Shown here: positions 2,373 to 49,590 of the stretch, piece after piece
Numbering within the stretch: the first letter of the stretch is position 1
How the letters are laid out: every line of letters starts with the position of its first letter
Virus record (IMG/VR): IMGVR_UViG_3300030339_000003
Span: 1 to 64,000 of that record
DNA length: 64,000 bases
Direction: 5' to 3' (one strand)
Made by a program: the position numbers and the translations under genes
Notes under the pieces: model-generated
The model's database searches: none
Told to the model about the DNA's origin: nothing
Seen by the model: only the letters and a program-made list of their open reading frames with translations

Positions 2373-3287
2373 TTAATTCTCCACCAGTTCTAACACAGGC
2401 CACCAAAGGTTTGTAGCTGCCGCAGTCGCAATGGCAACATGAGAACCAGCAACTAAACCTGCACGCGCAGTAATGTTACCCAGCCCACGAGCTTGACCGT
2501 ATGCCGCGTTACTGGTTAACTCGGCAGTTAAAACGGTTTGGTTGGCAGAACCCATTGCCATTTGTGCACCGGTCTGTTGTACGATGTTTGGTAGTTTCTG
2601 ACCATTTGGCGTCCAAATAGATAACGGATAAACCAGATCATTGAATTCACAGGTATTGGCCAACACATCAGAGTCAGTAGCCGTAGCACTGTAAGTAGGT
2701 ACTGCGCCAGTGTCACTGAAACCAGACATCAAACGAACTTTGTATGCGTTACCGTTGTAGTTATATACCAACGTGCCATCAATCGCACCAGCGTTAGCTA
2801 ATTGCGAACGGTTCAGTGTTGTGCCCACTGCGGAGTTCGGGACAAACAGAACTTTACCTTTACGGCTGAATTTATGCCAGAACGTAGGGACTGCAGAAGA
2901 AGCCACGATACCAGTAGCTTGGCTAGAAACCAATGAACGTAAACCAGCAGCATTGATTAAACCATCAATAACGACGCTACCGAAGTAACCGAGGTTATCG
3001 TCACCCATCTGAAGGTTGTTAGGACCTTCACCGCGTGTACGAGTTGCTTGGGTATAAAAGTTACGACTGATTTGACGGTCTTTAGAACCGATGGTTTCAA
3101 AGACGTAGTAATACCAGGCATCTTGAACAGCAGTGGTATCATTGAATACCAGAGTAGATGCAGTCTGCTGGGTCAGCGTACCAATTGGGGTTCCCAAGTT
3201 AGTACGATCGATTACCGTGGCAGAACGATAGATATTAACATCCACCGCCTCGGTATTCGTGTTTTGCATCTGTAACTGTACAGTCAT
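2373..3287 (-). CDS. Virion structural protein, paralog family
   Basis: GEGPNNLQMGDDNLGYFG, WHKFSRKGKVLFVP, WWPVLELV. Confidence 0.8.
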   Translation of the reverse strand: MTVQLQMQNTNTEAVDVNIYRSATVIDRTNLGTPIGTLTQQTASTLVFNDTTAVQDAWYYYVFETIGSKDRQISRNFYTQATRTRGEGPNNLQMGDDNLGYFGSVVIDGLINAAGLRSLVSSQATGIVASSAVPTFWHKFSRKGKVLFVPNSAVGTTLNRSQLANAGAIDGTLVYNYNGNAYKVRLMSGFSDTGAVPTYSATATDSDVLANTCEFNDLVYPLSIWTPNGQKLPNIVQQTGAQMAMGSANQTVLTAELTSNAAYGQARGLGNITARAGLVAGSHVAIATAAATNLWWPVLELVEN

Positions 3288-3296
3288 GTTAAATCC

Positions 3297-4964
3297 TTAA
3301 TGAAGTAAACTTAATGGAATAGGGATTGGGAAAGCAGAAGGTTTTCTGATTGTTTTAACCGTGGCCATCGTGTAACCGGTATAAACAACTTTGTCAGGCA
3401 CGCCAACTGTTTTAAAGTTGATAGACTTAATCGTCTTAACAACATTAAAGGTTGTAGGAAGCACAACAACTGGAGTAGAACTACCACCAGGATAGGCGTG
3501 CAATAAACGAACCCCTTTAACCGTATTAGTTAAGGCATAAGTTGCAGACGTAATTTGACGCGGAATAACATCAACTTTAAATTGCAGAATTTTCTTTAAA
3601 GCATTCTGAATAGTTGAATAACTGAATACCGGAGCTAAAGCGGCACCGCCTTGATACAGCGAACCAGTCGCACGCACGGCCCTTACAACATCTGTTAAGG
3701 CAAACGTAGCTGATGTGACTTTATCAGGGCTTAGTGACGCTTTGATGCCCATCATTTTACGCACCGCGCCTTGTGTTAACGACGTGTGGTTAATGACTGG
3801 AACCGGATGACCTAATTCTAAATTCACTACATTTAATGAATTTAAATTCTTAACACCAATTAGAATCAATAAAGGACGCCATGCAACGTAGTTGTCAACA
3901 CCTCCCGCGCCAATGACTTCTTTTGATGTTAAAGCAGTAGCGCCACGACTGTAGATCAATCCATCGGTATCTGAAACAATCGTCTGGTCACCAATGATCG
4001 GGTCACCGTTACCGTCTAACCCAATGTTCATGTTCGCATTAGTAAAGACTTCCCAATGCGTATTTGTTGGGTCATCACGATGCACACGATAAATCAGATC
4101 TTCCCACTCATTACTACCCAGGTCACCCAATCCCCTCGGTGTCCCAACATAATAACGGCTTTTCCCGATGGTTGCTAACTTAGTACGGTTAATTAAACCC
4201 GCTGTGACTAAGTTATTATAACTGATTTGGTTAACAACAGTTTTCTGAGCAATATACATGATCTGCCCATAATAACTAAACTTTAACCAAATGCTATCAG
4301 GTGTAATAGTGTGTGCTGTACCTAATCCGACTAATGAAGCCAATGACCCTGTCGTGATAAGATCTTTACCCAACACTTGTCCAAGGTAACCTAACGTCCA
4401 ATTACCTTTAATAATTTTAGATTCGTCAAAACGAACAAGTAACATTTCGCCGGATAAATAGTTACTGTTAATCTTTACAACCCAACCATTGTCAGTTGTA
4501 TCGACTAAAGAAACATCATCTGCGCTAATTCGGTAGTTAGAAATGTCCTCGAGTTGGTCTAACGCGGCATTCAAAACCCCAGTGTAATCTACAAAGTTAG
4601 TTAAAACAATTTGTGCAACTTTAACGTTCTCGCCGTCATTATACTTGTAAACACCCTTAGCATTAAGATTCAATAATGTCGTTAGGTCTTCAATCGTATC
4701 ATCAACGGTAAAATTCAGAACAACCGGGCCTAACAACGTTGCGCATTCCCATTCCTGGTCTACTGCATCGATCTTTAAAGATTGTGATTCTAAACGTGCA
4801 ATACGTTTATTCTCATTTTCCGGAACGATATCAATAGAAACGACTTCGATGTTATCCACAGTAACTTGATCTAAGCGTTCTACCGCCGAAGGACGATCTT
4901 GATAAGTTACTTTGTTAATTGCTATGAATTTGTCGAGTAACAGTTGCATGGCGTTAGGACCCAT
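3297..4964 (-). CDS. Virion/tail-associated protein carrying the family domain plus C-terminal repeats
   Basis: GNWTLGYLG..WLKFSYYG..WRPLLIL; start moved to ATG 4964 (SD AGAGGA) because ATG 5021 lies in a terminator tail. Confidence 0.75.
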   Translation of the reverse strand: MGPNAMQLLLDKFIAINKVTYQDRPSAVERLDQVTVDNIEVVSIDIVPENENKRIARLESQSLKIDAVDQEWECATLLGPVVLNFTVDDTIEDLTTLLNLNAKGVYKYNDGENVKVAQIVLTNFVDYTGVLNAALDQLEDISNYRISADDVSLVDTTDNGWVVKINSNYLSGEMLLVRFDESKIIKGNWTLGYLGQVLGKDLITTGSLASLVGLGTAHTITPDSIWLKFSYYGQIMYIAQKTVVNQISYNNLVTAGLINRTKLATIGKSRYYVGTPRGLGDLGSNEWEDLIYRVHRDDPTNTHWEVFTNANMNIGLDGNGDPIIGDQTIVSDTDGLIYSRGATALTSKEVIGAGGVDNYVAWRPLLILIGVKNLNSLNVVNLELGHPVPVINHTSLTQGAVRKMMGIKASLSPDKVTSATFALTDVVRAVRATGSLYQGGAALAPVFSYSTIQNALKKILQFKVDVIPRQITSATYALTNTVKGVRLLHAYPGGSSTPVVVLPTTFNVVKTIKSINFKTVGVPDKVVYTGYTMATVKTIRKPSAFPIPIPLSLLH

Positions 4965-5002
4965 ATCTTTGTTCCTCTTAGTGTTAAGCATAAAATCAGA
5001 AA

Positions 5003-5053
5003 TAAAAAATAAAGCATACATATAGCAGACCTAGAGGGTTTCCCCTCTAAGTC
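5003..5053 (-). terminator. Hairpin terminator with GAAA loop
   Basis: GACUUAGAGGG-GAAA-CCCUCUAGGUC, then spacer and CUUUAUUUUUU. Confidence 0.75.
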
Positions 5054-5205
5054 CGCAAGTATCATTGTTTGAGTTGTTTTTGTTTAAATTAAACGGGCCT
5101 GTGTTAACCCAATCGTTGGAACGAAAGAACACCGATATCGAGTATCGATCTTTTAATTTGTAACTTTGTTTATTCTTCCGTATATACTATTATTTATAGT
5201 AAATA
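5028..5205 (-). ncRNA. Candidate structured non-coding RNA
   Basis: Interval with no credible ORF between two terminators; 74-nt multi-stem fold at 5086-5159 with minus-specific G-U pairs. Confidence 0.4.
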
Positions 5206-5248
5206 AAAAAATAAAGAAATAGCTGGCAAGGAGCCGAAGCTCCTCACC
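5203..5248 (-). terminator. Hairpin terminator with UUCG loop
   Basis: GGUGAGGAGC-UUCG-GCUCCUUGCC, then AGCUAUUUCUUUAUUUUUUU. Confidence 0.8.
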
Positions 5249-5255
5249 ATATAGG

Positions 5256-5555
5256 TTAAAAGATCAGTTGACCTAAACGAATGATTTCATCATAATCCAT
5301 GATAACCGTTTGGCGATTGTCAATAGACACTTTGAAAGAGTGTTTGTTCACTAATCCGTTGTAATGGATGGCAATAGGTGTTTCACCGATGACACCGGTA
5401 GCGATACCCGTTACACCGATAAACATAGTTGATAATTCCGAGTCTTGCCCGTGGATAGTGCCTTTACGAATGGTAGCACCATGAGAAGGAATACCGTCGA
5501 CCTGGGTTAACGACAAGAAATGTTTCAGTGTTTGTTCTAACAAGTTGTCATCCAT
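5256..5555 (-). CDS. Hypothetical protein
   Basis: 99-aa ORF with SD GAGG. Confidence 0.75.
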   Translation of the reverse strand: MDDNLLEQTLKHFLSLTQVDGIPSHGATIRKGTIHGQDSELSTMFIGVTGIATGVIGETPIAIHYNGLVNKHSFKVSIDNRQTVIMDYDEIIRLGQLIF

Positions 5556-8455: not shown

Positions 8456-9502
8456 TTAAATAGCTACTGGTGCTTTGATAGGATCGTGATGGTTATAATT
8501 GATCAACTCAAAATCATCAATCGTGTAATCGAAGATAGAATCCTTTTTCTTAATATACATAAGCGGCTTTGCATATGGTTCACGAGTTAATTGCAACTTA
8601 ACTTGTTCCAGATGGTTTTGATAGATGTGCACATCAACACCATTGTAAACAAGTTCACCTGGCACCATGTTAACTTGCTGGGCAATCATTTGCGTAAGCA
8701 AAGCATATGAAGCGATGTTAAACGGTAAACCTAAGAAAGTGTCCGAACTACGCATGAGGAAGAAGCAGTTTAGTCGACGAGTGGGGATACCAGCGTCATC
8801 AAACTGTTTCTTTAATTTCTCAGGTTCTGCTATCTCGCCGTTTTCTGGATTAAGAAGCAACATGTGAACCACACCGAATTGATATTTTTTATGACGAAAC
8901 AGTTCAAAACGTTCGTACAATGACAATTCGGTAGTAGTGAACTGGAAATAGTTGTGACAAGGTTCTAATGCCATTTGATCTAACTGACCCACATTAATAG
9001 CACTGACATAAATACGACGGTTATCGGGATCGTTCTTTAACAAGTCAATTACTTTTTGAATCTGATTAGTGGAACGACGATAAACACACGCAGGAGGGTT
9101 GCCATTATCTTTCTGCATGTAACCTTCAAAATGGTAACCTTTGGATTCCAAATGGCATCTGATACGGTGTCCGGTATCATGTGTTATATAAGTGTCAACC
9201 CAATCGGTCCATTGTTTACCATAGACTGGACCCAAGTCACCATTTTTATCAGCCCATTCTCGCCAGATCTTAACCCCATTATCTTCCAGGTACTCAATGT
9301 TGGTTTCGCCTTTAAGGAACCAAAGCAGTTCATGGATGATTGAACGCAAATGAGTTTTCTTGGTAGTAACCAAAGGGAAACCATCTGCCAGATTAAAACG
9401 TAACATACGACCAAATACAGATAACGTGCCAGTACCAGTACGATCTGATTTAGGAGTACCGCTCGTTAATACATCTTCGAGTAATGCCAAATAGTTTTTC
9501 AT
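8456..9502 (-). CDS. thyA: Thymidylate synthase
   Basis: [49 protein letters not shown]. Confidence 0.97.
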
Positions 9503-15361: not shown

Positions 15362-15811
15362 ATGCTGAATAACAAAATGGAAATACAGAAAATGATTGAG
15401 AAGTTTTTAAGCCGTTTCTTTAAAACACAGCTTACACCGTTTGACTATCCCGACATGCCGTTACAATTCTTAGTAAAGGAAGATAAGTTTCAGTTTACGG
15501 AAGATTATACGACGCCCGATACTGTTATCCCAAAAGGCTTTATAACAGACGGTGCGAGTACTCCACGTTTACTGCAAGGATTGTATCCAGGTTATTACAA
15601 ATACTTTCCAGCAGCTGCTGTGCATGATTTCTTGTACGGTGAAGGTGAACTGTCCAGAAAAGATTGTGATGCAGCTTTACGTGACATCATTCGTTGCCGT
15701 TTAAAGATGGGATGGGAATACTGGTTTATTATGTGGCTAGTGGTTCGCATGTTTGGTGCAAGTCATTATATCAAACGTAATGATCAAGGTAACACAATTA
15801 AGCCAGTTTAA
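15362..15811 (+). CDS. DUF1353 family protein
   Basis: IPKGFITDGASTP..AAAVHDFLY..VRMFG signature; true start may be downstream. Confidence 0.85.
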   Translation: MLNNKMEIQKMIEKFLSRFFKTQLTPFDYPDMPLQFLVKEDKFQFTEDYTTPDTVIPKGFITDGASTPRLLQGLYPGYYKYFPAAAVHDFLYGEGELSRKDCDAALRDIIRCRLKMGWEYWFIMWLVVRMFGASHYIKRNDQGNTIKPV

Positions 15812-15850: not shown

Positions 15851-15878
15851 TAATAAGGGAGCGCAAGCTCCCTTATTA
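15851..15878. terminator. Bidirectional terminator between convergent genes
   Basis: TAATAAGGGAGC-GCAA-GCTCCCTTATTA. Confidence 0.85.
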
Positions 15879-15888
15879 GATGTGTTTA

Positions 15889-16473
15889 TTAAAACCGATC
15901 TTGGTATTTACCAACTGCAATACGAGCAACTGCATCACTTAATTGATCGTGTTCCAACAACACCGGATTGTAGATCACTTTGTTAACAATATCACCACAA
16001 GTGATTACAACATCTTTCCAACCTTCTGGAGTAGGTTCACTTGGAAGTACGACATTAAACACAAATACTTCCGAACCACCAGACGTTGACACACCGTAAA
16101 CACCACCTGATCTTTCGACCAGACCGGCAAACTGAACTAAATCAAAGACTTTGTATTTCAAGTCAAAGTTAGTTAAAAACATATGGGTGTTTTCGGCTTT
16201 TAATAATGCTAAGCGTTTGCCCATACGTTTCTTTAGTTCGATTTGAATATAACGATCAATAAACTCTTGCACCGTTTCCATGCGTTGACGCGTTAATGGA
16301 ATGTCCGCAATAAACTGTTTGATATCTTCCAGGTTAAAGCGGTAATCCATACTTTGAGCGATACTTGACATGGACCAAAGTGCAATCATGTCATGGGTAA
16401 GTTTATAAGAAGCTTCAACACGAGAACCTTTCTTATAATAGCTAACATCTAAAACATGTGTTGATTTAACCAT
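15889..16473 (-). CDS. Hypothetical protein (paralog of 16497)
   Basis: MVKSTH..W..SS..R.ETVQEFIDRY..GD.V..V.YN. Confidence 0.75.
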   Translation of the reverse strand: MVKSTHVLDVSYYKKGSRVEASYKLTHDMIALWSMSSIAQSMDYRFNLEDIKQFIADIPLTRQRMETVQEFIDRYIQIELKKRMGKRLALLKAENTHMFLTNFDLKYKVFDLVQFAGLVERSGGVYGVSTSGGSEVFVFNVVLPSEPTPEGWKDVVITCGDIVNKVIYNPVLLEHDQLSDAVARIAVGKYQDRF

Positions 16474-16496
16474 TATTCAATTACCCCCGGTCAAAG

Positions 16497-17105
16497 TTAT
16501 TTATGTTGTGTTATTGTATTCAAAAGAGCATTGCCTACAGTCATCTTAACGGCACGAACTGTTTCAGCCATTTTACGAAGAACCGCTGCTGACAAGTATT
16601 TATGGTTATAAGTAACATACCCAATGTTATCGCCATGACGTAATGTAATATCACGATGACCTGCGCGACCACAATACTGATGCGAAACATCCATAATGAA
16701 CTCTTTCTTGTTTCCGCTAAGGATGCCATAACAACCTAACGGCTGAACAACGATTTGTTCAAACTTGCCCGGGAATTTCTTATTAATGTGCGCTGTGACC
16801 AGATCTTTGAAATTAGACGTGTCCAGCGCCAGGAACCCTTCCGCATAACGCGCGTTTTGGAAACGGTAGTTAAGCTCAACAAACATATAACGGTCGATGT
16901 ATTCCTGCGGGGATTCTTTACGACGGTTATAAACTTGAACGGATTCAACAAAACGTTTTACTTCCTGGATTGCCATCATGTGCGTGACGTTACGAGGAAG
17001 TGAACTGGTTTTCCAAAGTTCCAGGATTTCTGGACGAATCAAATAGCTAACGTCTTTACCTGTTTCAATTTCGACAATGGATGCTGCGTGTGTTGCTTTG
17101 ATCAT
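16497..17105 (-). CDS. Hypothetical protein (paralog of 15889)
   Basis: MIKATH..W..SS..RKESPQEYIDRY..GD.I..V.YN. Confidence 0.75.
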   Translation of the reverse strand: MIKATHAASIVEIETGKDVSYLIRPEILELWKTSSLPRNVTHMMAIQEVKRFVESVQVYNRRKESPQEYIDRYMFVELNYRFQNARYAEGFLALDTSNFKDLVTAHINKKFPGKFEQIVVQPLGCYGILSGNKKEFIMDVSHQYCGRAGHRDITLRHGDNIGYVTYNHKYLSAAVLRKMAETVRAVKMTVGNALLNTITQHK

Positions 17106-17135
17106 TGAATATACCTTTTAAATAAAGTTGCTAAT

Positions 17136-17762
17136 TTAAGTGGTTTGTTGGTAGTCAATAGTAAGTGCGTTACTATTGACCAAATGGAACTTATCAATAT
17201 TTAACGCATTATGCAAACGTTCTAATGTGATAGTTATTGTATCGGGGCGAATCTCTTCTAACGATCGAGTAGTTTTCAAGAAAGTTTCAGCTAACTGATT
17301 TTCCACACTATCGATATTAAGATCTTTGCCGTAGGTCAGGTAATAACCATAAAACGCAAGCTCATCACGTTGTAGGGTTGAGTCTTCCTTACATACTTGT
17401 TCGGCCATACTTTTAATGTATGATTCACCACATGTCCCGAAGTGCTCCAACGTAACATCTTCTTTTACGGTTACGGCTATGGAGACTTCGACTTTATCGT
17501 CGGATTTAAAATAATAAATCCCCATCATTGTCCAGGGTTGTTTCTTTTCTAACAAAAATTCCCTGGCGTATTCTTGTGCGATTTTAAGGTCGCCTCCCTT
17601 TAGGTGTAAGCTCAGGTCAGCGTAGTGGAAAGCAGTTGGTAGATGATTCATATCCCCGATAATGTGAAACTTAGCTAAGCAACGTTCAAGTACTGCATTG
17701 ATATGATTAGCCTTGTTACGGATAAGACTGATTTTCTTCCGTGGCTTTTTATTCTGTCCCAC
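17136..17762 (-). CDS. Hypothetical protein
   Basis: 208 aa, GTG start, basic N-terminus KKPRKK. Confidence 0.75.
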   Translation of the reverse strand: MGQNKKPRKKISLIRNKANHINAVLERCLAKFHIIGDMNHLPTAFHYADLSLHLKGGDLKIAQEYAREFLLEKKQPWTMMGIYYFKSDDKVEVSIAVTVKEDVTLEHFGTCGESYIKSMAEQVCKEDSTLQRDELAFYGYYLTYGKDLNIDSVENQLAETFLKTTRSLEEIRPDTITITLERLHNALNIDKFHLVNSNALTIDYQQTT

Positions 17763-17790
17763 AATTTACCCCTTTTAAAAAATGTTTAAG

Positions 17791-18456
17791 TTAGTCGCGT
17801 GAATAAGGAGAATTAATATCATAAGGATGTTGATATTGTGGTCTGTTATAATTTGGCCCTTGCATTTGTTGGTTGGGTTGACCACCGCCATAAACATTTT
17901 GCGCAAACCCTGGTCCCATTGGCGCACCTTGATACGCTTGCTCTGTTTGTTGACCCCATACAACCATGTCACGAATTACAAAAGCAGAAATTTCAACCAG
18001 AGGCTCATCTACTTTGCCAGATGTGAATTCAAAATTAAATGAATTGATATAAGCTTCAACATCGACTTTATTAAAGAACCAATGAATCCTTTTGAATTCG
18101 ACAACTCGGTCAAACTTTTCTTCGAGTGCGGTAAAAATATTACGAGTTGTTAACGGCTCGCCAAACATATTTTGGTCTATAATCAAGAAAGACGACATTA
18201 ATTTAACCGGTGGCATATATGTCGGAAGTGGCGAGTGTAAACAAATTGCTGACAAGGTTGAAACTACCTCAACACCTGTTAACAATTCAAGAATACGTTT
18301 GTCATCCCAACCCATATTTGCATCAAGCTCTGCAACACAATATATGGCATCTTTACGGTTATCGATATCTGCGAATTCCATTACCAAAGTTTTGTTTAAT
18401 TGGAGATTTAGATCACCCAACTCGGGAACAGTACCCCATGAATTATTGTCAGTCAT
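17791..18456 (-). CDS. Hypothetical protein with Q/N/G/P/Y-rich C-terminal tail
   Basis: Overlaps the AAA gene by 8 nt; SD AAGGAG. Confidence 0.75.
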   Translation of the reverse strand: MTDNNSWGTVPELGDLNLQLNKTLVMEFADIDNRKDAIYCVAELDANMGWDDKRILELLTGVEVVSTLSAICLHSPLPTYMPPVKLMSSFLIIDQNMFGEPLTTRNIFTALEEKFDRVVEFKRIHWFFNKVDVEAYINSFNFEFTSGKVDEPLVEISAFVIRDMVVWGQQTEQAYQGAPMGPGFAQNVYGGGQPNQQMQGPNYNRPQYQHPYDINSPYSRD

Positions 18457-19681
18457 TTTTAATAAACTCCTTTAATGCTAAGTTAAATTGATTGAAGTCC
18501 CATTTGTTTGCAATAACCAATTCTTGTAATTCACCACCGGTAATCTTCACACCGGCAGGTAATTCGAATTGTGCATCTGGGTACATCATGGTAATGTATT
18601 CTTTAATTTCAACATCAGTAAAGGCAGGGATAAAGATTTTCTTATCCACACGACCCGGACGTGTTAATGCTTTAGACAATTTATCGGCGATGTTAGTAGT
18701 AATGAAAATGATTTCACCACTCAATTCTTTTAACCCGTCTAATGTATTTAAAATAGTAACGATAGACACTTCATCGGTATCTACAGGTTTTTCATCTTCA
18801 ACTTTTTGTGCTCGAGTTTGTGCCCCCTTACAACTTTCAATATCTTCCAAGGTAATAATACTGTTCTTGGGTGCGCTGTAAAACGCTGCAGCGAATGTAA
18901 GATTAGTCATGGTAGATATATTTAACATAGCAATTTCACGATCGTATTCGTGCGCTACGGCTTTAATAATACTGGTCTTACCCGTTCCAGGAGGCCCATA
19001 CAAAAGAATCGTCAATTTGTATGGGATGCCGCGATCAACGTACCATTGTTTATTATTTAAAAACTTATCAATAGTTTCGATGATTTCAGCTTTAGCTGTT
19101 TTGTTAATAATAACGGAACTTAATTTACGTTTAGGCGCGGCACCTAATAAACTCCAACACACGTCTTTACCTGCAAAGGTAAATATTTCACGTTCATCGG
19201 GTAAACGCTTTTCACTAAACTCATTAAAGAAATTAACCATGATTCTTTTATTTAAAGAAACGGTTGATATGGTGATCTTTAATTTTTCTTTTGTAGATGC
19301 TTGTGATTCTAATCGACTTATGACAACACGGTACAAACGCTTTTTATAAATCATCCAATGGGTGCCTACTCCTGGGCCTAGTGCGCCAAAAGCTGACCAA
19401 GAACTATTCACTAAGCCAACGGATTTTGTAAACTTAAAACATTCTACTTTTTCAAACCATTCTAAAAAGTTCTTAAAGTTTTTGTCTGAATTACCTTCCC
19501 CGCTATTATCCATAGAAAGACGAACAACAAACATATCTTCAAATCTATTTTGAAGATATTTCGGACCTTTCCAAAAAGCACCTACAACACCAGCAGCCAA
19601 CGTGATACTAATTGTGCTACCTATTAATGGTAGTTCTTTAGCAAGTTCGTTAAACTTAGTAAACATATCAAGCAACAACAT
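18449..19681 (-). CDS. BCS1-like membrane-anchored AAA+ ATPase
   Basis: N-terminal TM; BCS1_N-like GPGVGTHWMIY; WYVDRGIPYK..LLYGPPGTGKTS; LEDIE; LNTLDG; TTN; RPGRVD. Confidence 0.85.
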   Translation of the reverse strand: MLLLDMFTKFNELAKELPLIGSTISITLAAGVVGAFWKGPKYLQNRFEDMFVVRLSMDNSGEGNSDKNFKNFLEWFEKVECFKFTKSVGLVNSSWSAFGALGPGVGTHWMIYKKRLYRVVISRLESQASTKEKLKITISTVSLNKRIMVNFFNEFSEKRLPDEREIFTFAGKDVCWSLLGAAPKRKLSSVIINKTAKAEIIETIDKFLNNKQWYVDRGIPYKLTILLYGPPGTGKTSIIKAVAHEYDREIAMLNISTMTNLTFAAAFYSAPKNSIITLEDIESCKGAQTRAQKVEDEKPVDTDEVSIVTILNTLDGLKELSGEIIFITTNIADKLSKALTRPGRVDKKIFIPAFTDVEIKEYITMMYPDAQFELPAGVKITGGELQELVIANKWDFNQFNLALKEFIKND

Positions 19682-19691
19682 GATTTATCCT

Positions 19692-19735
19692 TTAAATAGA
19701 GTGGTTAACTACTTAAGTAATATAGGTTTAAAAAT
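19692..19735 (-). promoter_or_regulatory. phiKZ-type early promoter plus 5' hairpin
   Basis: TTTTTAAACC-TATATTAC (core 19717-19724) followed by the stem TTAAGTAG/CTATTTAA. Confidence 0.75.
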
Positions 19736-19738
19736 ATA

Positions 19739-19768
19739 TACTACTATCTCCTAACGGAGATAGTAGTA
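19739..19768. terminator. Hairpin terminator
   Basis: TACTACTATCTCC-TAAC-GGAGATAGTAGTA. Confidence 0.8.
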
Positions 19769-19780
19769 GCTTATTATGTT

Positions 19781-20143
19781 TTATTTTTTACCAGACATCC
19801 AGAATATTAAATGCAGCACTATCTCTATGCCGACCACATAGGCTAATGCTTCTAAATAATTCGGGAATAGGAATGAATCATTTAAGAACGACATACATGA
19901 GAAAAATAACACTGCATCGAACAATCGTTCTCTATGATCAAACCACGGATTAACTTTTAGCTTAAAGGCATACATAATTGCCATAGCTAATCCACCAGAA
20001 ACAATAGCAAGTGCTAAAGAAAAAACGAAATAGCTGATTTTGTTACTGTTTGACACGTCAAGTAAAATATAAGTTTCTACTACGGTAGCAAACAAAATAA
20101 TTATGCTGGTGTAAAATTTATTGTAACTTGATACCTTTTCCAC
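19781..20143 (-). CDS. Four-TM membrane protein
   Basis: Four hydrophobic segments in 120 aa. Confidence 0.7.
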   Translation of the reverse strand: MEKVSSYNKFYTSIIILFATVVETYILLDVSNSNKISYFVFSLALAIVSGGLAMAIMYAFKLKVNPWFDHRERLFDAVLFFSCMSFLNDSFLFPNYLEALAYVVGIEIVLHLIFWMSGKK

Positions 20144-20408
20144 TTTTCGTCTCCTGTTTAGGAAGCGGTTGTAATTGTTCTAACATAATAGGGTAATGCG
20201 CAGGACACCCCATACGAGCAGTGCAGTTGTCCAATACATCCAATTCACCATTAATTTTAACAATTGCTAAATTAACGGGATAAGGAACATTAATGTCATT
20301 AACTGAATTAATACGAGTGTAACCTTCAGCACTGACTTTTGCAGACTTGCGAACGGGTTTTAATCTTTCGCCTACAAAGATAACAAAGTTCTCATATTCT
20401 TTTACCAT
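20118..20408 (-). CDS. Hypothetical protein
   Basis: 96 aa, SD GAGG. Confidence 0.7.
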   Translation of the reverse strand: MVKEYENFVIFVGERLKPVRKSAKVSAEGYTRINSVNDINVPYPVNLAIVKINGELDVLDNCTARMGCPAHYPIMLEQLQPLPKQETKSGKGIKLQ

Positions 20409-23688: not shown

Positions 23689-23738
23689 CTATGAAAATAT
23701 ATCGTGAGCTATACTTATAGATAATGTAGAACTAAAAT
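23689..23738 (-). promoter_or_regulatory. phiKZ-type early promoter plus 5' hairpin
   Basis: TTTTAGTTC-TACATTAT (core 23721-23728), then CTAT-AAGTATA/TATATTT-ATAG stem. Confidence 0.65.
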
Positions 23739-23755
23739 ACTTTATACATTAACAT

Positions 23756-23785
23756 TATACTACTAGGGTTGCCCCTAGTAGTATA
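23756..23785. terminator. Hairpin terminator
   Basis: TATACTACTAGGG-TTGC-CCCTAGTAGTATA. Confidence 0.8.
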
Positions 23786-26006: not shown

Positions 26007-26063
26007 GATAAATAAAGATAAATACTGCATCTTTATACACCTAAGTAATGTAGATCTGAAAAT
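26007..26063 (-). promoter_or_regulatory. phiKZ-type early promoter plus 5' hairpin
   Basis: TTTTCAGATC-TACATTAC (core 26045-26052), then GGTG-T-ATAAAGAT/ATCTTTAT-T-TATC. Confidence 0.7.
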
Positions 26064-34525: not shown

Positions 34526-34575
34526 CCAGGTGTAACATCATAACTACTGTTACACCTAGATAATATAGGTTTATT
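34526..34575 (-). promoter_or_regulatory. phiKZ-type early promoter plus 5' hairpin
   Basis: TAAACC-TATATTAT (core 34560-34567), then 12-bp stem CTAGGTGTAACA/TGTTACACCTGG. Confidence 0.7.
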
Positions 34576-42585: not shown

Positions 42586-45500
42586 CTAGAGATTGGAACC
42601 CGTCGGTAAATCTGATTGATAGATGTAATCCAATACACCTGCATCCATTGGTAGACCGATAGACACTGGGACTGAACCCGCAATACGTGCTGTAGACAAT
42701 ATTGCGTCACCAATCATAAACGTTGATTTCCGATTGATTAACAGAATTTGCAAAGCATTGGTAATAACTTCAGCAGCAGGAATTAAAGACAGATTATGTC
42801 TGATCTTTTTACCCGATACAATAAAGTAAGCTTTGTCACCGTAACACGTTGCATAAACATAAAACGTTTTGTTACCCGGGGATGGATCGATATCACGTAA
42901 ATCAACTGTGCCTGTTGGGGCGTCGTATTGAGTTCCGTTGATAACTAACTTAGTCCCTGCTTTGAAATAGATAATCCAACCTGAGTCAGGATAGCAACTG
43001 GATAACAAATAAGGGCCATCAGTTGTGTTAGCGATACAACATGCTTGTCCTGTATAGGTTTGGTCGTACAAAGCAGCAAAACCTACTTTAGGAATCATTG
43101 CAATAGAACCACTTGGTGTATAGCTTCCTGAGGTAACCACACTACGGGTAAACTTATTCGTACTCAGATTATAATCGTAATCCGGATAGAATGCCGTACT
43201 ACCACCTGAAACTTTACCCAGTAAACCAGAACTTCCTTTTACAGTAATAACGTTTCCATTTTTGTAACTTTGGAAATGTCCTGTTGTCCCACCTACTTGA
43301 ACATAGAAACTAGGACTTGCTGTGTCCCCGCCACCCATTGTTAAAATAGTAGAAGCATCAAGGAAAACTGGAGCAGTGATTGGGTATACACCATTGACAG
43401 GCGCGCCTACAGTAAAGTTAATTGCCAACACTTGAAGACGGATAGTTGACGGGCTGCTCGGCGAGTACCAATGAACATTAACAAACATTGGTTGGTTAGC
43501 TGATAGCCCGGCGTTGGAGATATCCCGCTGAGGAATACTAACACGTAATCCCATAACAGTAGCGGTAGATCCATCTGACTGCACCATAGACTTGATTTGG
43601 TTCAGTACGCTTGCCGTCATACCGTAATAATTATTAGCGACAACATTTAACGTCATGTCATCATCTTTAAATGTTTTAGTCACTGACCGTGGGCAAACAT
43701 AATAATTATCCAAAACGGTAGCCATATTACCGACTTGACGTGAAACATTATTCCATGCACCATTAACCAACAACAGTCCCATTCCTGACAATGTTGTTAC
43801 GCCCATCTCGACACCAGCTGCTGCTAATTCGGCTGCTGTTCCGCTATATGCGTTAAACAATTGCCCGTTATGAAGGTTACTACGATAAACGGTATTTACT
43901 AAAGGGCGCGCTTTCATATTACTAAGTTTAATGTTAGTAATGCCCGCTCTCAAAGCAAAAGCACCGGTTACTTTGCGGAAACCCATAATGGAGTTTTGTG
44001 CATTAATGTCTAACCCAGGAATCCATTCTCCATCGATATCATTGGCTGGAACGTTAGAACCTCCACCAATTTGTAAAGGCGCTGGAGTTTTAATTGCGAT
44101 GTTAAATGAAGTCCAATTATTCGCCGCAAGTGTTGCATTAGCTGTTGATTTTAACAAAGCGTCAGCTGCAGTGGTATTACCGCCTTTAAGCCCTATGAAC
44201 CCGGTAGGCACATAAACGTGGTCACCGTTATCACGAAGTACCAACAAGTCACCAGTACGCGTTACAATCCCGCCATAAGGTCCCCAGTTATATCCCGCCA
44301 CGTTAGCCGCAAAATCGCTCAATACAAATTTACTTGAACCCGACAAACCATCATTCGCATTTAACGCATTAATGGGTTGTTGCGCCGCAATAGTAATTGC
44401 CCCACTGATACAATTTATACGAATAGTCATTTCAAAACTGACGTATTGGAACCAGTTCAAATCAGCATTACGATACAAAGGACGATGCACAACTTTCATC
44501 AACATGACGTCAGGTGATTCTTCGGCAAAGAAAATAGCCGCATTATAACGTCTAACAATGTCGGTTGCATAAGGTGTGATTGTATTAATAAAACGAGTAA
44601 TGTGACCTTGCGCATCTGTTACCGTAGCATCAGGAATCCAATATGCCGAATTAGTATATTGATTACCTGTCAGATCTTTAAAGGTCACCGGCACCGCTGT
44701 AAAAGTCACAACAGTTTTAGTCGTCAAATCACTGACTAATGCGCGATAGAAATAAACTTTAAGATCGTCTGGCTGGCTTACAATGTAAATGTAAGTTTTT
44801 GTCTTAAAGCAATGACAAAACGTTGGGTCGGTTAAAGAAGCGCCAGGGATATTACTTAAATCAAATTCTTTATAGTTGTGTGTGTCAGGATTTAACGTGC
44901 CGTTAGTTAAAGCACCAAACCATTTCCCTTTAACTGAGTCACCCGCAACCATAACCCCAGGGCCTGAGCCTAACATAACTGTATCTAAAGCATATCCCTG
45001 AGCTGTTAAAGCAGCGTTGGCATATTTAAACCCGGTAAAATAATAAGGTTTAGTCGCGTCTTTATAATCGTCAATAAAACTAAAGTACAAACCTTTTACA
45101 CGACCGTCATAATGACGTTTAACGGAAACCAAACGACCATTGTTTTCAAGACACATAGCAGCGCAGTTGTTGTCAGTCCCTAAACCTTCAAAAGAGCCAT
45201 CGATGACAGGTGGCAAATAATCATCAGCTGTTAAAGAAGAAATTGGTAGTAGACCGTTATTTAATAAACCTGATGTATCAGGAACAGCTGCTTTAATGGC
45301 TGCTAATGCACCGGCGCTGGTAGAAAACAAATTAGTTGTTGTACCTAGAACATCTTGCGCTACAGTAGCAGTAGCAAAGTTATCGATGTTTTGTAATAAC
45401 AACATGGCTGCTGTAACTTTGTGGGGGTTACCACTATTCCGACCATGATTAATTAAATTGGTATTAACTAGATTATATTTAGCAATCAAGTTTTTAAGTG

Positions 45501-46065
45501 TTGTATCAACCAACGCAAAGATTTGAGTAATAGTTTGGCTTTTACTTACTTTGTTCTGATAAACACCTACCAGGTATTTAACGTACAGAACCAGTTCAGA
45601 CCAATCCATTAATTCTTCTTTTGAATGCCAGTGATAAGAAGATGGCAACGTTGGAGGAATTTGAATTACCTTAGACCATGGGATAGGTTCAGACCCATGC
45701 GAAATAGCATCGAGTTGGTCTTCCAAGCTACTACGCGGAATAAAGGAAGCGCCGACTGAATGATAGCTAATGGTCAACTCGTCGTAAGACTGTAATAAAA
45801 CGTCATCCAATTCGATAAACGTATTAATGTCCAATCCGGTCATTTCAATTAATGGCATGGGTTTAAAGACTTCTTTCCAACCCGTTTTAATTGATTGCCC
45901 ACTGGCGTCTTTGATCTTAACTGAACCTGCTTTAAAGGGCGCGCCGTTAGGAACAATCCAAGGACACTGTTTATCGCTCAGTTTTTGTACTTCGTCTTTA
46001 ATGTCGTTAACGGGGTTAGTCCCTGCCGGATCAAACTGCAAAGCCGGCCACATTTCAATTAACAT
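42586..46065 (-). CDS. Tail fibre protein (phiKZ gp145/146-like)
   Basis: NPHKVTA..L.NIDNFATA, PPVIDGSFEGLG, DLR.I..SPGNKTFYVY. Confidence 0.75.
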   Translation of the reverse strand: MLIEMWPALQFDPAGTNPVNDIKDEVQKLSDKQCPWIVPNGAPFKAGSVKIKDASGQSIKTGWKEVFKPMPLIEMTGLDINTFIELDDVLLQSYDELTISYHSVGASFIPRSSLEDQLDAISHGSEPIPWSKVIQIPPTLPSSYHWHSKEELMDWSELVLYVKYLVGVYQNKVSKSQTITQIFALVDTTLKNLIAKYNLVNTNLINHGRNSGNPHKVTAAMLLLQNIDNFATATVAQDVLGTTTNLFSTSAGALAAIKAAVPDTSGLLNNGLLPISSLTADDYLPPVIDGSFEGLGTDNNCAAMCLENNGRLVSVKRHYDGRVKGLYFSFIDDYKDATKPYYFTGFKYANAALTAQGYALDTVMLGSGPGVMVAGDSVKGKWFGALTNGTLNPDTHNYKEFDLSNIPGASLTDPTFCHCFKTKTYIYIVSQPDDLKVYFYRALVSDLTTKTVVTFTAVPVTFKDLTGNQYTNSAYWIPDATVTDAQGHITRFINTITPYATDIVRRYNAAIFFAEESPDVMLMKVVHRPLYRNADLNWFQYVSFEMTIRINCISGAITIAAQQPINALNANDGLSGSSKFVLSDFAANVAGYNWGPYGGIVTRTGDLLVLRDNGDHVYVPTGFIGLKGGNTTAADALLKSTANATLAANNWTSFNIAIKTPAPLQIGGGSNVPANDIDGEWIPGLDINAQNSIMGFRKVTGAFALRAGITNIKLSNMKARPLVNTVYRSNLHNGQLFNAYSGTAAELAAAGVEMGVTTLSGMGLLLVNGAWNNVSRQVGNMATVLDNYYVCPRSVTKTFKDDDMTLNVVANNYYGMTASVLNQIKSMVQSDGSTATVMGLRVSIPQRDISNAGLSANQPMFVNVHWYSPSSPSTIRLQVLAINFTVGAPVNGVYPITAPVFLDASTILTMGGGDTASPSFYVQVGGTTGHFQSYKNGNVITVKGSSGLLGKVSGGSTAFYPDYDYNLSTNKFTRSVVTSGSYTPSGSIAMIPKVGFAALYDQTYTGQACCIANTTDGPYLLSSCYPDSGWIIYFKAGTKLVINGTQYDAPTGTVDLRDIDPSPGNKTFYVYATCYGDKAYFIVSGKKIRHNLSLIPAAEVITNALQILLINRKSTFMIGDAILSTARIAGSVPVSIGLPMDAGVLDYIYQSDLPTGSNL

Positions 46066-49100: not shown

Positions 49101-49590
49101 ACCATTCATTAATCATGTCTACGACATCACCAAAAGTCGTGATTTCGTAAGTCAATGAATGTGTGTGCCAAATCGGATCAAACACAACGGGCTTGTTTTT
49201 AATATTGGACCATTTAATTAAACGCTGATCATTTGCTGCGTTATTAATCAGTTCAATAAAGGAAGCATCAAACAAAGTAGAAGAACCTGTTTGATGATAA
49301 TCCATAACGACTTGTTTAATATCAGGGTTGGTCATTTCAATTAAACAAGCGACAGGTGCAGCGCACAATGCAGATAACGACCCCATCATGCGATAAATAC
49401 GATAATCGTTTTTGGTTAACAGATTACCATCAAGATCATAGACCTTAAGAGACTCTACGAAAAAAGGCGCATAACGAGGTACGAATACGTTTTGGTTATC
49501 GTCTAATACGTATGACTCGTCATAGACTTTGTTTTCGGTAAACTCTTGATACAGATCAAGTTTAAAACCAGGAATGATGGGATAGTTCAT
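46108..49590 (-). CDS. Tail fibre protein (paralog of 42586)
   Basis: DAHGLTKAQIG..VDN, PPTIGGSFEGLG, DLR.V..NPGNSTFYIY. Confidence 0.75.
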   Translation of the reverse strand: MNYPIIPGFKLDLYQEFTENKVYDESYVLDDNQNVFVPRYAPFFVESLKVYDLDGNLLTKNDYRIYRMMGSLSALCAAPVACLIEMTNPDIKQVVMDYHQTGSSTLFDASFIELINNAANDQRLIKWSNIKNKPVVFDPIWHTHSLTYEITTFGDVVDMINEWSSMLQQTEQNYGRIAVETQTALVRKYFERNGAFIDYALARHKTAIDAHGLTKAQIGKGLVDNIPTSSIAEVLRGVPNQRLTPNGLDKLIERYGFNGDAYLKADVLPISFYGNTSFIPPTIGGSFEGLGSLSECAVFCTETDGTISMLSNHFDGQTSGLFFSIITGYPNTLTVNYQSYRYTHPVLTAAGVVVDTIAQSEGRDIMLIGSGSRWFVVFTNGTLNPAYHTVVEVDLSALIQANLTGQVMSIHLMGAYVVIIQAFAADNTGVNARAFYRMPTSALVTGAKVIPTRMNLTYTNADGDSFTNSDTFLWAKNKTDANGNYLSSYVKFNPPLVNTLTMQTFYRAMLNFCTKTEGDTNTWLIKIFGFLNVNIVNDTDNSSFAFTPENNYKFDPATGIMTMVDYLEPPTIDPSSSANPGAVLNAYYNRPNGGANLPWSNGARNENGWSLMPDGNMLITATVNNTNTPHYVQLITTGATSPYDAIAKNFNKVNYPNFNYKSSVEVIVSPILSSTFSSSVSYDISGEFYNAIGQSSNSALGVFHRDVTGDYAVRDSFKNINFASVLSRPLSNNVRKTNISPLTPRVNLTGDAAAISAFGITGLGLTVWSIGLQGKYYAGGNPGWRVPVKDESILMPIGVTLSNGSNNVLNITPSGYITYPKAIVDAIAAELIPAQYQNTPNYAAIIIDLTFVPNAAITSKPVLVQVSYGDVANRTRRTALGVLSVTYSTSGNDRTVTGYTVISKSDINDMTRQNALTATAYPFTYAINNLVENVSNIYFNGSLMSIAFNSYLRTSYTGNASHCGSDWDVGISDKLIKRTSVYMQNILGVNNISYVPKVGKGLKYDQQYSGGAANLVKVGSQAVGLSSCYPDPAWSVFFQSTTYPMFNGKTYTIPAGVIDLRTVKANPGNSTFYIYASVTDGIAGYEISESKRYDTSFNIWIGTVTTNANQILNIARSNVLLLNGKRVSETKRGGAIPAVTGNIDETGVMHWAYPSEIIQS

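What the first reader, a model, noticed from the sequence alone, without database searches (positions are those of the whole stretch)
17136..19735. Early operon led by a mitochondrial BCS1-like membrane AAA+ ATPase: candidate phage protein translocase
Seen: the complete BCS1 architecture, with a single N-terminal TM helix, a BCS1-specific middle domain (GPGVGTHWMIYKKR..V..SR) and a BCS1-type AAA domain (WY.DRGIPY..LLYGPPGTGKTS, LEDIE, LNTLDG, RPGRVD). It is the first gene behind a perfect TATATTAC early promoter and is translationally coupled to a protein with a prion-like tail. Known: Bcs1 is a heptameric ring that moves the folded Rieske protein across the mitochondrial inner membrane, and Chimalliviridae enclose their genome in a lipid early-infection vesicle. 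Inference: a phage machine that moves folded proteins across, or extracts them from, the inner membrane or early vesicle, with the downstream genes (17791, 17136, 16497, 15889) as adaptors or cargo.
Basis: partly seen in the sequence, partly recalled or inferred. Interest (0 to 1): 0.8.

Follow-up and report, generated by a model that had tools for sequence, protein, structure and literature searches.

The report
Phage BCS1-like membrane AAA+ ATPase
This jumbo-phage gene really does encode a membrane-anchored ATPase built like the mitochondrial folded-protein translocase Bcs1, but the same family is already recorded in about 200 sequenced phages, is dispensable in the model phage phiKZ, and has no fixed partner genes, so it is an ordinary member of a known family whose job has not been tested.

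Summary
ORF 18449..19681 (-) encodes a 410-aa protein with an N-terminal hydrophobic helix, a Bcs1 middle domain and an intact AAA domain. Pfam BCS1_N scores 34 bits against a cut-off of 28.1. The best PDB sequence match is yeast Bcs1 (E 6.6e-40). The AF2 model has pLDDT 90.7, and the 17 best Foldseek matches are all Bcs1.

The gene follows a terminator hairpin and a recurrent promoter-like 12-mer, CTAYATTAYYTA (5 copies against 0.14 expected). It overlaps the next gene by 8 nt. A second terminator closes the five-gene unit.

- The family (PHROG 7485) occurs in 198 phage records, including phages outside Chimalliviridae.
- Iyer et al. 2021 already described it as a possible translocase.
- The phiKZ ortholog gp286 is transcribed by 2 min and sediments in heavy and pellet fractions, but it tolerates transposon insertions.
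- No neighbour is conserved across phages. Three related contigs keep the downstream genes without BCS1. The Q/N-tailed protein has no counterpart at that position in the 57% and 47% orthologous loci.

Most likely it is an early, accessory, membrane-anchored ring ATPase that handles protein clients at the host inner membrane. Its cargo is unknown. A specific link to the early-infection vesicle is not supported.

The parts
18449..19681 (-). BCS1-like AAA+ ATPase gene, 410 aa (PHROG 7485)
   Evidence: ORF. phrog_7485 E 2.8e-98 over the full length. Pfam BCS1_N plus AAA. Best PDB match is Bcs1 at 6.6e-40. AF2 and Foldseek point to Bcs1.
19571..19633 (-). N-terminal membrane helix, residues 17-37
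   Evidence: Uncharged 21-residue segment, KD19 1.73, conserved in position in homologs. The side before it is net acidic and KGPKYLQNRF follows it. By the positive-inside rule this predicts the N-terminus outside and the ATPase in the cytoplasm (inference).
19112..19528 (-). Bcs1-specific middle domain, residues ~52-190, including the GPGVGTHW motif with invariant G106
   Evidence: PF08740 match at res 101-190. The 6sh3 alignment starts at res 65. G106 is invariant in 58 sequences. A beta-rich domain is modelled at high pLDDT.
18626..19009 (-). AAA domain, residues 225-352: Walker A 18974-18997, Walker B LEDIE 18836-18859, sensor-1 N330, Arg fingers R341/R344 18650-18661
   Evidence: PF00004 E 1.4e-19. 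G229, G232, K235, E279, N330, R341 and R344 are invariant.
19714..19725 (-).
   Evidence: 5 exact copies of CTAYATTAYYTA in the window against 0.14 expected. Conserved upstream of the orthologs in L004, L006 and L007. Resembles the AR9 early vRNAP consensus AAATATATATTAT-(6N)-G.
19739..19768 (-). Terminator-like hairpin (13 bp stem, T-rich tail) that ends the upstream unit
   Evidence: The hairpin is kept, with different stem sequences, in L004 and L005.
19688..19693 (-). Shine-Dalgarno AAAGGA, 6 nt before the ATG
   Evidence: Read directly from the sequence.
17791..18456 (-). 221-aa protein. Its start overlaps the BCS1 stop by 8 nt. The last 56 residues (17794-17961) are rich in Q, G, P, Y and N.
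   Evidence: No Pfam, PHROG or NCBIfam hit. Conserved in the 90% relative L006. L004 and L005 carry unrelated short ORFs at this position.
17136..17762 (-). 208-aa protein, phrog_6965, function unknown
   Evidence: phrog_6965 E 1.4e-23. 33 phage records. AF2 pLDDT 80. No PDB fold match. BFVD matches only to uncharacterised jumbo-phage proteins.
16497..17105 (-). 202-aa protein, paralog of the next gene
   Evidence: 27% identity and E 5e-17 to the 194-aa protein. No family hits.
15889..16473 (-). 194-aa protein, paralog of the previous gene and last gene of the unit
15851..15878 (.). Bidirectional terminator-like hairpin (12 bp stem) that closes the unit
19781..20143 (-). 120-aa polytopic membrane protein just upstream, separated from BCS1 by the terminator. 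It is present with BCS1 in three loci and absent in three contigs that lack BCS1.
   Evidence: Three hydrophobic segments. 62-84% identical in L004 and L006. Absent together with BCS1 from L013-L015.

Best explanation
The gene encodes an ordinary member of the phage BCS1-like AAA+ family (PHROG 7485).

Shown here:
- It has a single N-terminal hydrophobic helix, a Bcs1-type middle domain and a catalytically complete AAA domain.
- It lies behind a terminator and a recurrent phage-specific promoter-like element.
- It heads a five-gene unit.

Inferred:
- The protein inserts in the host inner membrane with its short N-terminus in the periplasm and the ATPase in the cytoplasm. This is the same topology as Bcs1, with N-terminus in the intermembrane space and ATPase in the matrix.
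- It assembles into a ring.
- It uses ATP hydrolysis to grip folded or partly folded protein clients at the membrane. If it acts as Bcs1 does, the direction would be cytoplasm to membrane or periplasm.
- It is made early.

It behaves as a mobile accessory gene, not as a core part of nucleus or early-vesicle biology. The genes downstream are co-transcribed neighbours, not dedicated partners.

My sub-confidences:
- Bcs1-family membrane-anchored active ATPase: about 0.9.
- Early expression: about 0.7.
- Accessory rather than core: about 0.75.
- True folded-protein translocation across the inner membrane: about 0.35.
For: Family membership:
- Pfam BCS1_N above threshold plus AAA.
- Bcs1 is the best PDB match by sequence (6.6e-40) and by fold (E 2e-29; the 17 best matches are all Bcs1).
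- Walker A and B, sensor 1 and both arginine fingers are invariant in 58 homologs.
- The hydrophobic helix is conserved in position, with basic residues on its C-terminal side.

Transcription unit:
- Terminator hairpins lie at 19739-19768 and 15851-15878.
- The 12-mer promoter-like motif is enriched 5 against 0.14 expected. It recurs upstream of orthologs and in intergenic gaps of related loci, including Klebsiella phage Miami.

phiKZ ortholog gp286:
- Transcript values are 0.1 before infection, 87 at 2 min and 562 at 10 min.
- 53% of the protein is in the gradient pellet, and the authors list it among proteins in heavy fractions (PMC10914614).

Accessory status:
- 20 and 55 transposon insertions are tolerated in PHIKZ286, while essential genes have none.
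- The gene is missing from the syntenic block in L013-L015.
- phiTE and Munch copies are 53% identical, and the tree scatters the known phages.
Against: - There are no direct data for this phage. No RNA run was found, and the one candidate run holds a 97% identical strain at a flat, DNA-like depth.
- The membrane helix is only moderately hydrophobic, and its topology is predicted, not measured.
- Ring size could not be modelled.
- No substrate is known for any phage member.
- In phiKZ, gp286 co-eluted with 70S ribosomes and cross-linked to the L7/L12 stalk (PMC10449902). That points to a different client.
- The 47% ortholog (L005) lacks the promoter motif directly upstream.
Confidence: 0.55

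Rival explanations
1. It is a translocase dedicated to the chimallivirus early-infection vesicle or nascent nucleus, moving folded proteins across that lipid boundary, with the four downstream genes as adaptors or cargo.
For: - Early-type promoter motif.
- Early transcription of phiKZ gp286.
- The closest known relatives of the phage are Chimalliviridae.
- If the vesicle is an internalised piece of inner membrane (my assumption, not checked here), a ring with its ATPase in the cytoplasm would push clients into the lumen (inference).
Against: - The family is present in phiTE (Vequintavirinae) and in large phages I take to be non-chimalliviruses: the Munch group, and Caulobacter, Brevundimonas and Erythrobacter phages.
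- gp286 is dispensable in phiKZ, whereas nucleus, import and RNAP genes are not.
- No neighbour is conserved across phages.
- The downstream 208-aa and ~195-aa genes persist without BCS1 in L013-L015.
- The 57% and 47% orthologous loci have no counterpart of the 221-aa gene at that position.
Confidence: 0.07
2. Membrane-proximal virion assembly chaperone. It binds and moves folded proteins destined for the head during prohead assembly at the membrane. This is the proposal of Iyer et al. 2021.
For: Published comparative-genomic proposal (PMC7824862). Half of phiKZ gp286 pellets together with assembly intermediates.
Against: - The gene lies in a block of small early-type genes, not among structural genes.
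- The phiKZ ortholog is transcribed from 2 min.
- It is dispensable for plaque formation.
- As far as I know, chimallivirus capsids assemble on the phage nucleus rather than at the membrane. I did not check this here.
Confidence: 0.1
3. Ribosome- or translation-associated AAA+ remodeller. The ring docks on ribosomes at the membrane and acts on the stalk or on nascent chains.
For: [quoted passage not shown] PHIKZ286 cross-linked to rplL, rplK and rplJ (PMC10449902).
Against: - In the glycerol-gradient study gp286 is not among the nine proteins peaking in ribosome fractions. It is spread over heavy fractions and the pellet.
- A ring of several hundred kDa could co-elute with large particles by size alone (inference).
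- L7/L12 is, as far as I know, abundant and flexible, which would favour incidental cross-links (not checked here).
- Nothing in the sequence suggests RNA or ribosome binding.
Confidence: 0.12
4. Host-takeover or counter-defence extractase. The ring pulls host inner-membrane proteins, such as abortive-infection effectors or receptors, out of the membrane. That would make it conditionally useful only in some hosts.
For: - Accessory, patchy, horizontally moving distribution.
- Early timing.
- Dispensable on a laboratory host.
- Small membrane proteins lie within one or two genes of it in several phages.
Against: - No similarity to known defence or anti-defence proteins beyond the generic AAA domain.
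- Structurally characterised Bcs1 pushes a folded domain across a membrane rather than extracting proteins (PDB entry titles).
- PHIKZ286 is not named anywhere in the main text of the phiKZ TnSeq paper, which describes conditionally essential genes.
Confidence: 0.16

Closest known systems
Mitochondrial Bcs1 / BCS1L (PDB 6sh3, 6uko, 8tp1, 9gs2)
   Same: - The domain order is membrane helix, Bcs1-specific middle domain, then AAA domain.
- It shares the GPGxxHW motif, Walker B written LEDI(D/E), sensor-1 N and RPGR(I/V)D.
- Sequence E is 6.6e-40 over res 65-369. Fold E is 2e-29 with TMq 0.65 over the full length.
- The predicted topology is equivalent.
   Different: - Only 24-28% identity.
- A shorter N-terminal tail: the helix starts at res 17.
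- The first half of the BCS1_N profile is not matched.
- The extra Pfam family PF25426 listed for eukaryotic members is not listed for the phage-like homologs.
- Eukaryotic Bcs1 forms its own clade (100/99), apart from all phage and metagenomic sequences.
- The Rieske substrate is not an obvious client in a phage-infected bacterium.
- The heptameric state was not tested.
Phage BCS1-like AAA+ ATPases: PHROG 7485, e.g. phiKZ gp286, Klebsiella phage Miami gp182, Salmonella phage Munch gp468
   Same: - Full-length profile match, E 2.8e-98.
- 35% identity to Miami over 99% of the length.
- In the tree it falls in a clade with Miami and metagenomic relatives.
- The N-terminal hydrophobic helix is the same.
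   Different: - No known phage record is closer than 35% identity, and there is no DNA-level match.
- phiKZ and PS119XW carry an insertion of about 100 aa between Walker B and sensor 1 that this protein lacks.
- The neighbouring genes differ in every lineage.
Bacillus subtilis YjoB (PDB 7w42), a bacterial AAA+ chaperone
   Same: It is the second-best structural relative after Bcs1 (Foldseek E 4e-17, TMq 0.55) and matches by sequence over res 186-365 at E 2.9e-17.
   Different: The match is much weaker than to Bcs1, and the sequence match is limited to the AAA domain.
FtsH, the label given to some orthologs in GenBank (for example in OMKO1 and RsoM3USA)
   Same: A membrane-anchored classical AAA domain. 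The TIGR01241 match is E 1.6e-16 but only 60 bits against a cut-off of 600.
   Different: There is no protease domain, the protein is only 410 aa, and the region before the AAA domain is the Bcs1 middle domain. The FtsH label on orthologs is a mis-annotation.

Membership tests
Bcs1 family (Pfam BCS1_N + AAA) | Bcs1-specific middle domain between the membrane anchor and the AAA domain | tested here: met
   PF08740 scores 34.0 bits against a cut-off of 28.1. The phmmer alignment to 6sh3 covers res 65-369. Foldseek full-length matches are to Bcs1 chains only, down to rank 17.
Bcs1 family (Pfam BCS1_N + AAA) | Single N-terminal membrane helix with the ATPase on the cytoplasm/matrix side | tested here: met
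   Uncharged 21-residue segment at res 17-37, KD19 1.73, conserved in position. Three basic residues lie in the ten residues after it, and the side before it is net acidic. This is a prediction only; no dedicated topology predictor was available.
Bcs1 family (Pfam BCS1_N + AAA) | Catalytically complete classical AAA module (Walker A, Walker B, sensor 1, arginine fingers) | tested here: met
   K235, E279/D280, N330, R341 and R344 are invariant or nearly so in 58 sequences. PF00004 E 1.4e-19.
Bcs1 family (Pfam BCS1_N + AAA) | Heptameric ring | not testable with these tools
   Only monomer prediction is offered. Indirect evidence: phiKZ gp286 sediments in heavy fractions and the pellet.
Bcs1 family (Pfam BCS1_N + AAA) | Translocation of a folded protein across a membrane | not testable with these tools
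   No substrate or assay data exist for any phage member in the papers searched.
Phage BCS1-like ATPases (PHROG 7485) | Full-length match to the family profile | tested here: met
   E 2.8e-98, res 3-404 on profile positions 5-413 of 430. 198 phage records by tblastn, 136 of them covering at least 80% of the query.
Chimallivirus early (virion RNAP) transcription unit | AT-rich conserved promoter element upstream, recurring across the genome | tested here: inconclusive
   CTAYATTAYYTA has 5 copies against 0.14 expected, all on the coding strand. It is present in related loci and resembles the AR9 early consensus. I found only five copies in 64 kb, one of them inside a gene, and the pattern was partly derived from the same sites.
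Chimallivirus early (virion RNAP) transcription unit | Transcripts present in the first minutes of infection | not testable with these tools
   No RNA run holds this phage. The phiKZ ortholog is transcribed from 2 min.
FtsH | C-terminal zinc metalloprotease domain | tested here: not met
   No protease domain appears among the 25 best Pfam matches shown. TIGR01241 scores 60 bits against a cut-off of 600.
Dedicated BCS1 operon with adaptor or cargo genes | Neighbour genes co-conserved with the ATPase | tested here: not met
   Only the ATPase is shared among the window, Miami, phiTE, Munch, phiKZ and PS119XW. The downstream genes are kept without BCS1 in L013-L015.

The most novel reading that the evidence does not exclude
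Phage BCS1-like rings are a virus-borne route, independent of Tat, for exporting folded proteins from the cytoplasm into or across the bacterial inner membrane. A further possibility is that the large viral diversity of this family, inside which eukaryotic Bcs1 appears as one tight clade in an unrooted tree, is the pool from which the mitochondrial translocase was recruited.
Probability: 0.15. Interest if true: 0.8.

Novelty: new member of a known kind. Interest (0 to 1): 0.35.

Why it matters
The family is widespread in large phages, and its only characterised relative moves a folded protein across a membrane. No phage member has been tested. Finding its client would show what phages need to move or remodel at the host membrane in the first minutes of infection, and it would bear on where mitochondrial Bcs1 came from. 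This particular copy adds a divergent sequence and a clear presence/absence polymorphism, but no new principle. The tractable system is phiKZ gp286, where transposon insertions in the gene were recovered.

Tried and rejected
- A DNA search of the region against known phages found nothing. The window is IMG/VR contig UViG_3300030339_000003, and the only viral-contig hit was itself.
- The sequencing-run searches found peat metagenomes and one run of unknown kind. Laying contigs showed a 97% identical strain at flat depth, so there is no expression information.
- TATATTAC as a stand-alone motif is not enriched.
- NCBIfam gave no family above its cut-off. PADLOC gave only weak generic AAA hits such as IetA. 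I rejected a defence-system identity.
- The ESM Atlas gave no usable lead for the 221-aa and 208-aa proteins; scores were 0.41 and 0.55.
- AF2 plus Foldseek on the 208-aa protein gave no PDB match (best E 0.06), only uncharacterised jumbo-phage proteins.
- The paper that first defined the phiKZ early promoters could not be retrieved, so the comparison with phiKZ rests on my recollection plus the AR9 paper.
- I looked for a recurring small membrane-protein partner. Such genes lie near BCS1 in several phages but are unrelated to each other and inconsistently placed.
Full report
**What is there**

The minus strand between 15.8 and 19.8 kb carries five closely spaced ORFs:
- 410 aa at 18449..19681
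- 221 aa at 17791..18456
- 208 aa at 17136..17762
- 202 aa at 16497..17105
- 194 aa at 15889..16473

Terminator-like hairpins lie immediately upstream (19739-19768, 13-bp stem, T-rich tail) and downstream (15851-15878, bidirectional). They bracket exactly these five genes. The stop of the first gene and the ATG of the second overlap by 8 nt (ATGACTGA), with AAGGAG upstream. The other gaps are 23-30 nt. A five-gene unit is therefore a reasonable reading.

**The 410-aa protein is a Bcs1-family AAA+ ATPase**

- Pfam gives AAA (E 1.4e-19, res 225-352) and BCS1_N (34.0 bits against a cut-off of 28.1). Only the second half of the BCS1_N profile is matched.
- Against all PDB sequences the best matches are yeast and mouse Bcs1 (E 6.6e-40 and 3.5e-34). 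The yeast alignment runs from residue 65 to 369, so it includes the middle domain. The next families match only the AAA domain, at about 1e-24.
- An AlphaFold2 model built on 58 homologs is confident (pLDDT 90.7, pTM 0.78). Its 17 best Foldseek matches in the PDB are all Bcs1 chains (best E 2e-29, TMq 0.65, full length). B. subtilis YjoB follows at E 4e-17.
- In the 58-sequence alignment the following are invariant: the Walker A lysine, Walker B E279 (with D280 nearly so), sensor-1 N330, both arginine fingers, and G106 of the GPGxxHW motif in the middle domain.
- Residues 17-37 form an uncharged 21-residue hydrophobic stretch. It recurs at the same place in Miami, phiKZ gp286 and the metagenomic homologs. 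Three basic residues follow it, and the N-terminal side is net acidic. By the positive-inside rule this predicts the N-terminus outside and the ATPase in the cytoplasm, which is the topological equivalent of Bcs1. This is an inference; no dedicated predictor was available.

**Promoter**

The octamer TATATTAC is not enriched in the window: 3 copies against 4.7 expected. Listing the intergenic regions showed a longer shared element. As CTAYATTAYYTA it has five exact copies, all on the minus strand, against 0.14 expected; none of 100 shuffles reached five.

The sites are at 19714 (before BCS1), 23718, 26042, 34557 and 53890. Four are intergenic and one lies inside a gene. I derived the pattern from four of these sites, so the fifth site and the copies elsewhere are the independent support.

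The motif stands on the coding strand in intergenic gaps of the related loci L004, L005 and L006, and of Klebsiella phage Miami. It lies directly upstream of the BCS1 orthologs at 90% and 57% identity, but not the one at 47%.

It resembles the early virion-RNAP consensus of phage AR9, AAATATATATTAT-(6N)-G (PMC5312081). TATATTAC also lies in intergenic DNA three genes upstream of phiKZ gp286 and one gene upstream of its PS119XW ortholog. That TATATTAC is the phiKZ early consensus rests on my memory, because the original paper could not be retrieved. No transcript data exist for this phage.

**Which phage**

The window is part of a 231-kb IMG/VR contig, and peat metagenome runs hold it. A 775-aa protein in the window is 43-45% identical to proteins of Erwinia phages RisingSun and Joad, Pseudomonas phage EL and Klebsiella phage Miami. 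The genera Risingsunvirus, Elvirus and Miamivirus are all classified in Chimalliviridae. I did not find chimallin in the window, so the assignment rests on these relatives.

**How common the gene is, and what is already known**

- The protein matches PHROG 7485 over its full length (E 2.8e-98, 'unknown function').
- tblastn finds it in 198 phage records, all below 60% identity, the best being Miami at 35%.
- Many carriers are chimalliviruses: phiKZ, PS119XW, Noxifer, Moabite, pEt-SU and Derbicus. phiTE (142 kb), whose record places it in Vequintavirinae, also carries it. So do several large phages that I take to lie outside Chimalliviridae: the 350-kb Munch group, Caulobacter CcrPW, Brevundimonas and Erythrobacter phages and Salicola SCTP-2. 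For these, the records give no family (Munch) or I did not fetch the lineage.
- Several GenBank records already call it 'mitochondrial chaperone BCS1' or 'chaperone'. Some call it FtsH, which is wrong because there is no protease domain.
- Iyer et al. 2021 reported BCS1 orthologs in all three major jumbo-phage groups. They proposed that these bind and translocate folded proteins during membrane-proximal assembly (PMC7824862).
- In a maximum-likelihood tree the eukaryotic sequences form one clade (100/99). The window protein groups with Miami and metagenomic relatives. phiKZ and PS119XW sit elsewhere, near phiTE and Munch.
- phiTE and Munch copies are 53% identical although phiTE is about 142 kb and Munch about 350 kb. 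I read that as horizontal transfer.
- A pattern-limited scan of one genome per prokaryotic species found only about three loci matching the middle domain among the 80 kept. The rest were generic AAA proteins.

**Published data on the phiKZ ortholog, gp286 (33% identity)**

- Transcript values are 0.1 before infection, 87 at 2 min and 562 at 10 min, and the second replicate agrees. So gp286 is an early gene (PMC10914614 supplement).
- In glycerol gradients of cells taken 10-30 min after infection, 53% of the protein is in the pellet and the rest is spread over the gradient. The authors list it among proteins sedimenting in high-molecular-weight fractions. This fits a large, possibly membrane-bound, oligomer.
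- In size-exclusion proteomics gp286 and its neighbour gp285 were predicted to associate with 70S ribosomes. gp286 cross-linked to rplL, rplK and rplJ (PMC10449902).
- In genome-wide transposon mutagenesis PHIKZ286 tolerated 20 and 55 distinct insertions (insertion index 0.016 and 0.036), like its non-essential neighbours. Genes called essential had none (bioRxiv 10.1101/2025.11.23.690004).

**The neighbours are not partners**

- An all-against-all comparison of ORFs around the ATPase in the window, Miami, phiTE, Munch, phiKZ and PS119XW shares only the ATPase itself.
- The 208-aa protein (phrog_6965) has homologs in 33 jumbo phages. In OBP and Kc263 these are not next to any AAA gene.
- Synteny is kept in close relatives at 57% and 47% ATPase identity. 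The order there is: small ORF, ATPase, variable short ORFs, the 208-aa gene, then the 202/194-aa family.
- The Q/N-tailed 221-aa gene is replaced in those relatives by unrelated short ORFs.
- Three further related contigs keep the flanking genes in order but contain no ATPase and no 120-aa membrane protein. The genes kept are homologs of the 151-aa, 96-aa (two contigs), 208-aa and ~195-aa proteins and the DUF1353 gene (two contigs).
- So the ATPase, with the 120-aa membrane protein just upstream of it, behaves as a cassette that is either present or absent.
- The 221-aa gene is real: 20 synonymous against 6 non-synonymous codon differences from the 90% relative. Its last 56 residues are Q/G/P/Y/N-rich. 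It has no detectable relatives or fold lead.
- The 202-aa and 194-aa proteins are paralogs (E 5e-17).
- The 208-aa protein models well (pLDDT 80) but matches only uncharacterised jumbo-phage proteins.

**Mechanism**

The architecture, the intact catalytic residues, the predicted membrane anchoring and the genomic setting are shown here. The rest is inferred from Bcs1. I infer a ring in the host inner membrane, with the ATPase in the cytoplasm, that grips folded or partly folded clients and moves them into or across the membrane.

Early timing is supported by the motif and by phiKZ gp286. Accessory status is supported by the transposon data, the patchy distribution and the presence/absence polymorphism.

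The client is unknown. The ribosome cross-links, an assembly role and extraction of host membrane proteins all remain open alternatives. A role specific to the early-infection vesicle is unlikely, because non-chimalliviruses such as phiTE carry the gene and phiKZ does not need it.

**Verdict**

The evidence does not support the vesicle link or the operon partners, and it overstates novelty. This is a new and rather divergent member of a known, already published phage family whose function is still untested.

Noticed in passing
window 19714-19725, 23718-23729, 26042-26053, 34557-34568, 53890-53901 (all minus strand); also L004 1565, 3872, 6957; L005 3437; L006 1050, 5054; L001 (Miami) 7277: The 12-mer CTAYATTAYYTA recurs on the coding strand, mostly in intergenic gaps. 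There are 5 copies against 0.14 expected. It is a probable phage-specific promoter class shared with Klebsiella phage Miami. Its temporal class is unknown.
   Followed up: partly
window 19739-19768 and 23756-23785; L004 and L005 upstream of their BCS1 genes: Terminator hairpins share TACTACTA...TAGTAGTA-type arms. The stem sequence differs between relatives while pairing is kept, which suggests a conserved terminator family in this lineage.
   Followed up: partly
L013, L014, L015 compared with window 15889-20408: Three related contigs keep the surrounding genes in order but lack both the BCS1 gene and the 120-aa membrane-protein gene. The two therefore look like one insertion/deletion cassette.
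   Followed up: yes
window 16497-17105 and 15889-16473: The 202-aa and 194-aa proteins are tandem paralogs (27% identity, E 5e-17). They have no family or fold assignment. Related copies follow the 208-aa gene in relatives.
   Followed up: partly
L010 (phiKZ) 3848-5374 and L002 (PS119XW) 3004-4518: The phiKZ-type orthologs are about 100 aa longer. The insertion lies between Walker B and sensor 1, opposite a short low-confidence loop (res ~290-305) of the window protein. In classical AAA proteins this region lies near the central channel.
   Followed up: no
L011 (phiTE) and L012 (Munch): The BCS1-like proteins of a 142-kb Vequintavirinae phage and a 350-kb Salmonella phage are 53% identical. 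That is closer than either is to the chimallivirus copies and suggests horizontal transfer among enterobacterial phages.
   Followed up: partly
window 42586-46065 and 46108-49590: Two adjacent proteins of about 1160 aa both match phrog_3573, and their N-terminal parts match virion structural and minor tail families. This is a tandem duplication of a large structural gene.
   Followed up: no
window 15362-15811 (+): A DUF1353 gene lies on the opposite strand at the end of the unit. It is 58-70% identical and syntenic in L005, L014 and L015.
   Followed up: partly
window 17196-17278: In run X3, which holds a 97% identical strain, an 81-nt stretch near the 3' end of the 208-aa gene is replaced by a diverged segment of the same length. 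This is a local hypervariable patch.
   Followed up: no
window 8456-9502: The thymidylate synthase gene (E 1.9e-102) matches its Pfam profile in two stretches, and the protein is 348 aa against a 266-position profile. It may carry an insertion.
   Followed up: no
GenBank records ON631220 (OMKO1), PQ309151 (RsoM3USA): Orthologs of this ATPase are annotated as the zinc metalloprotease FtsH, although the family has no protease domain.
   Followed up: partly
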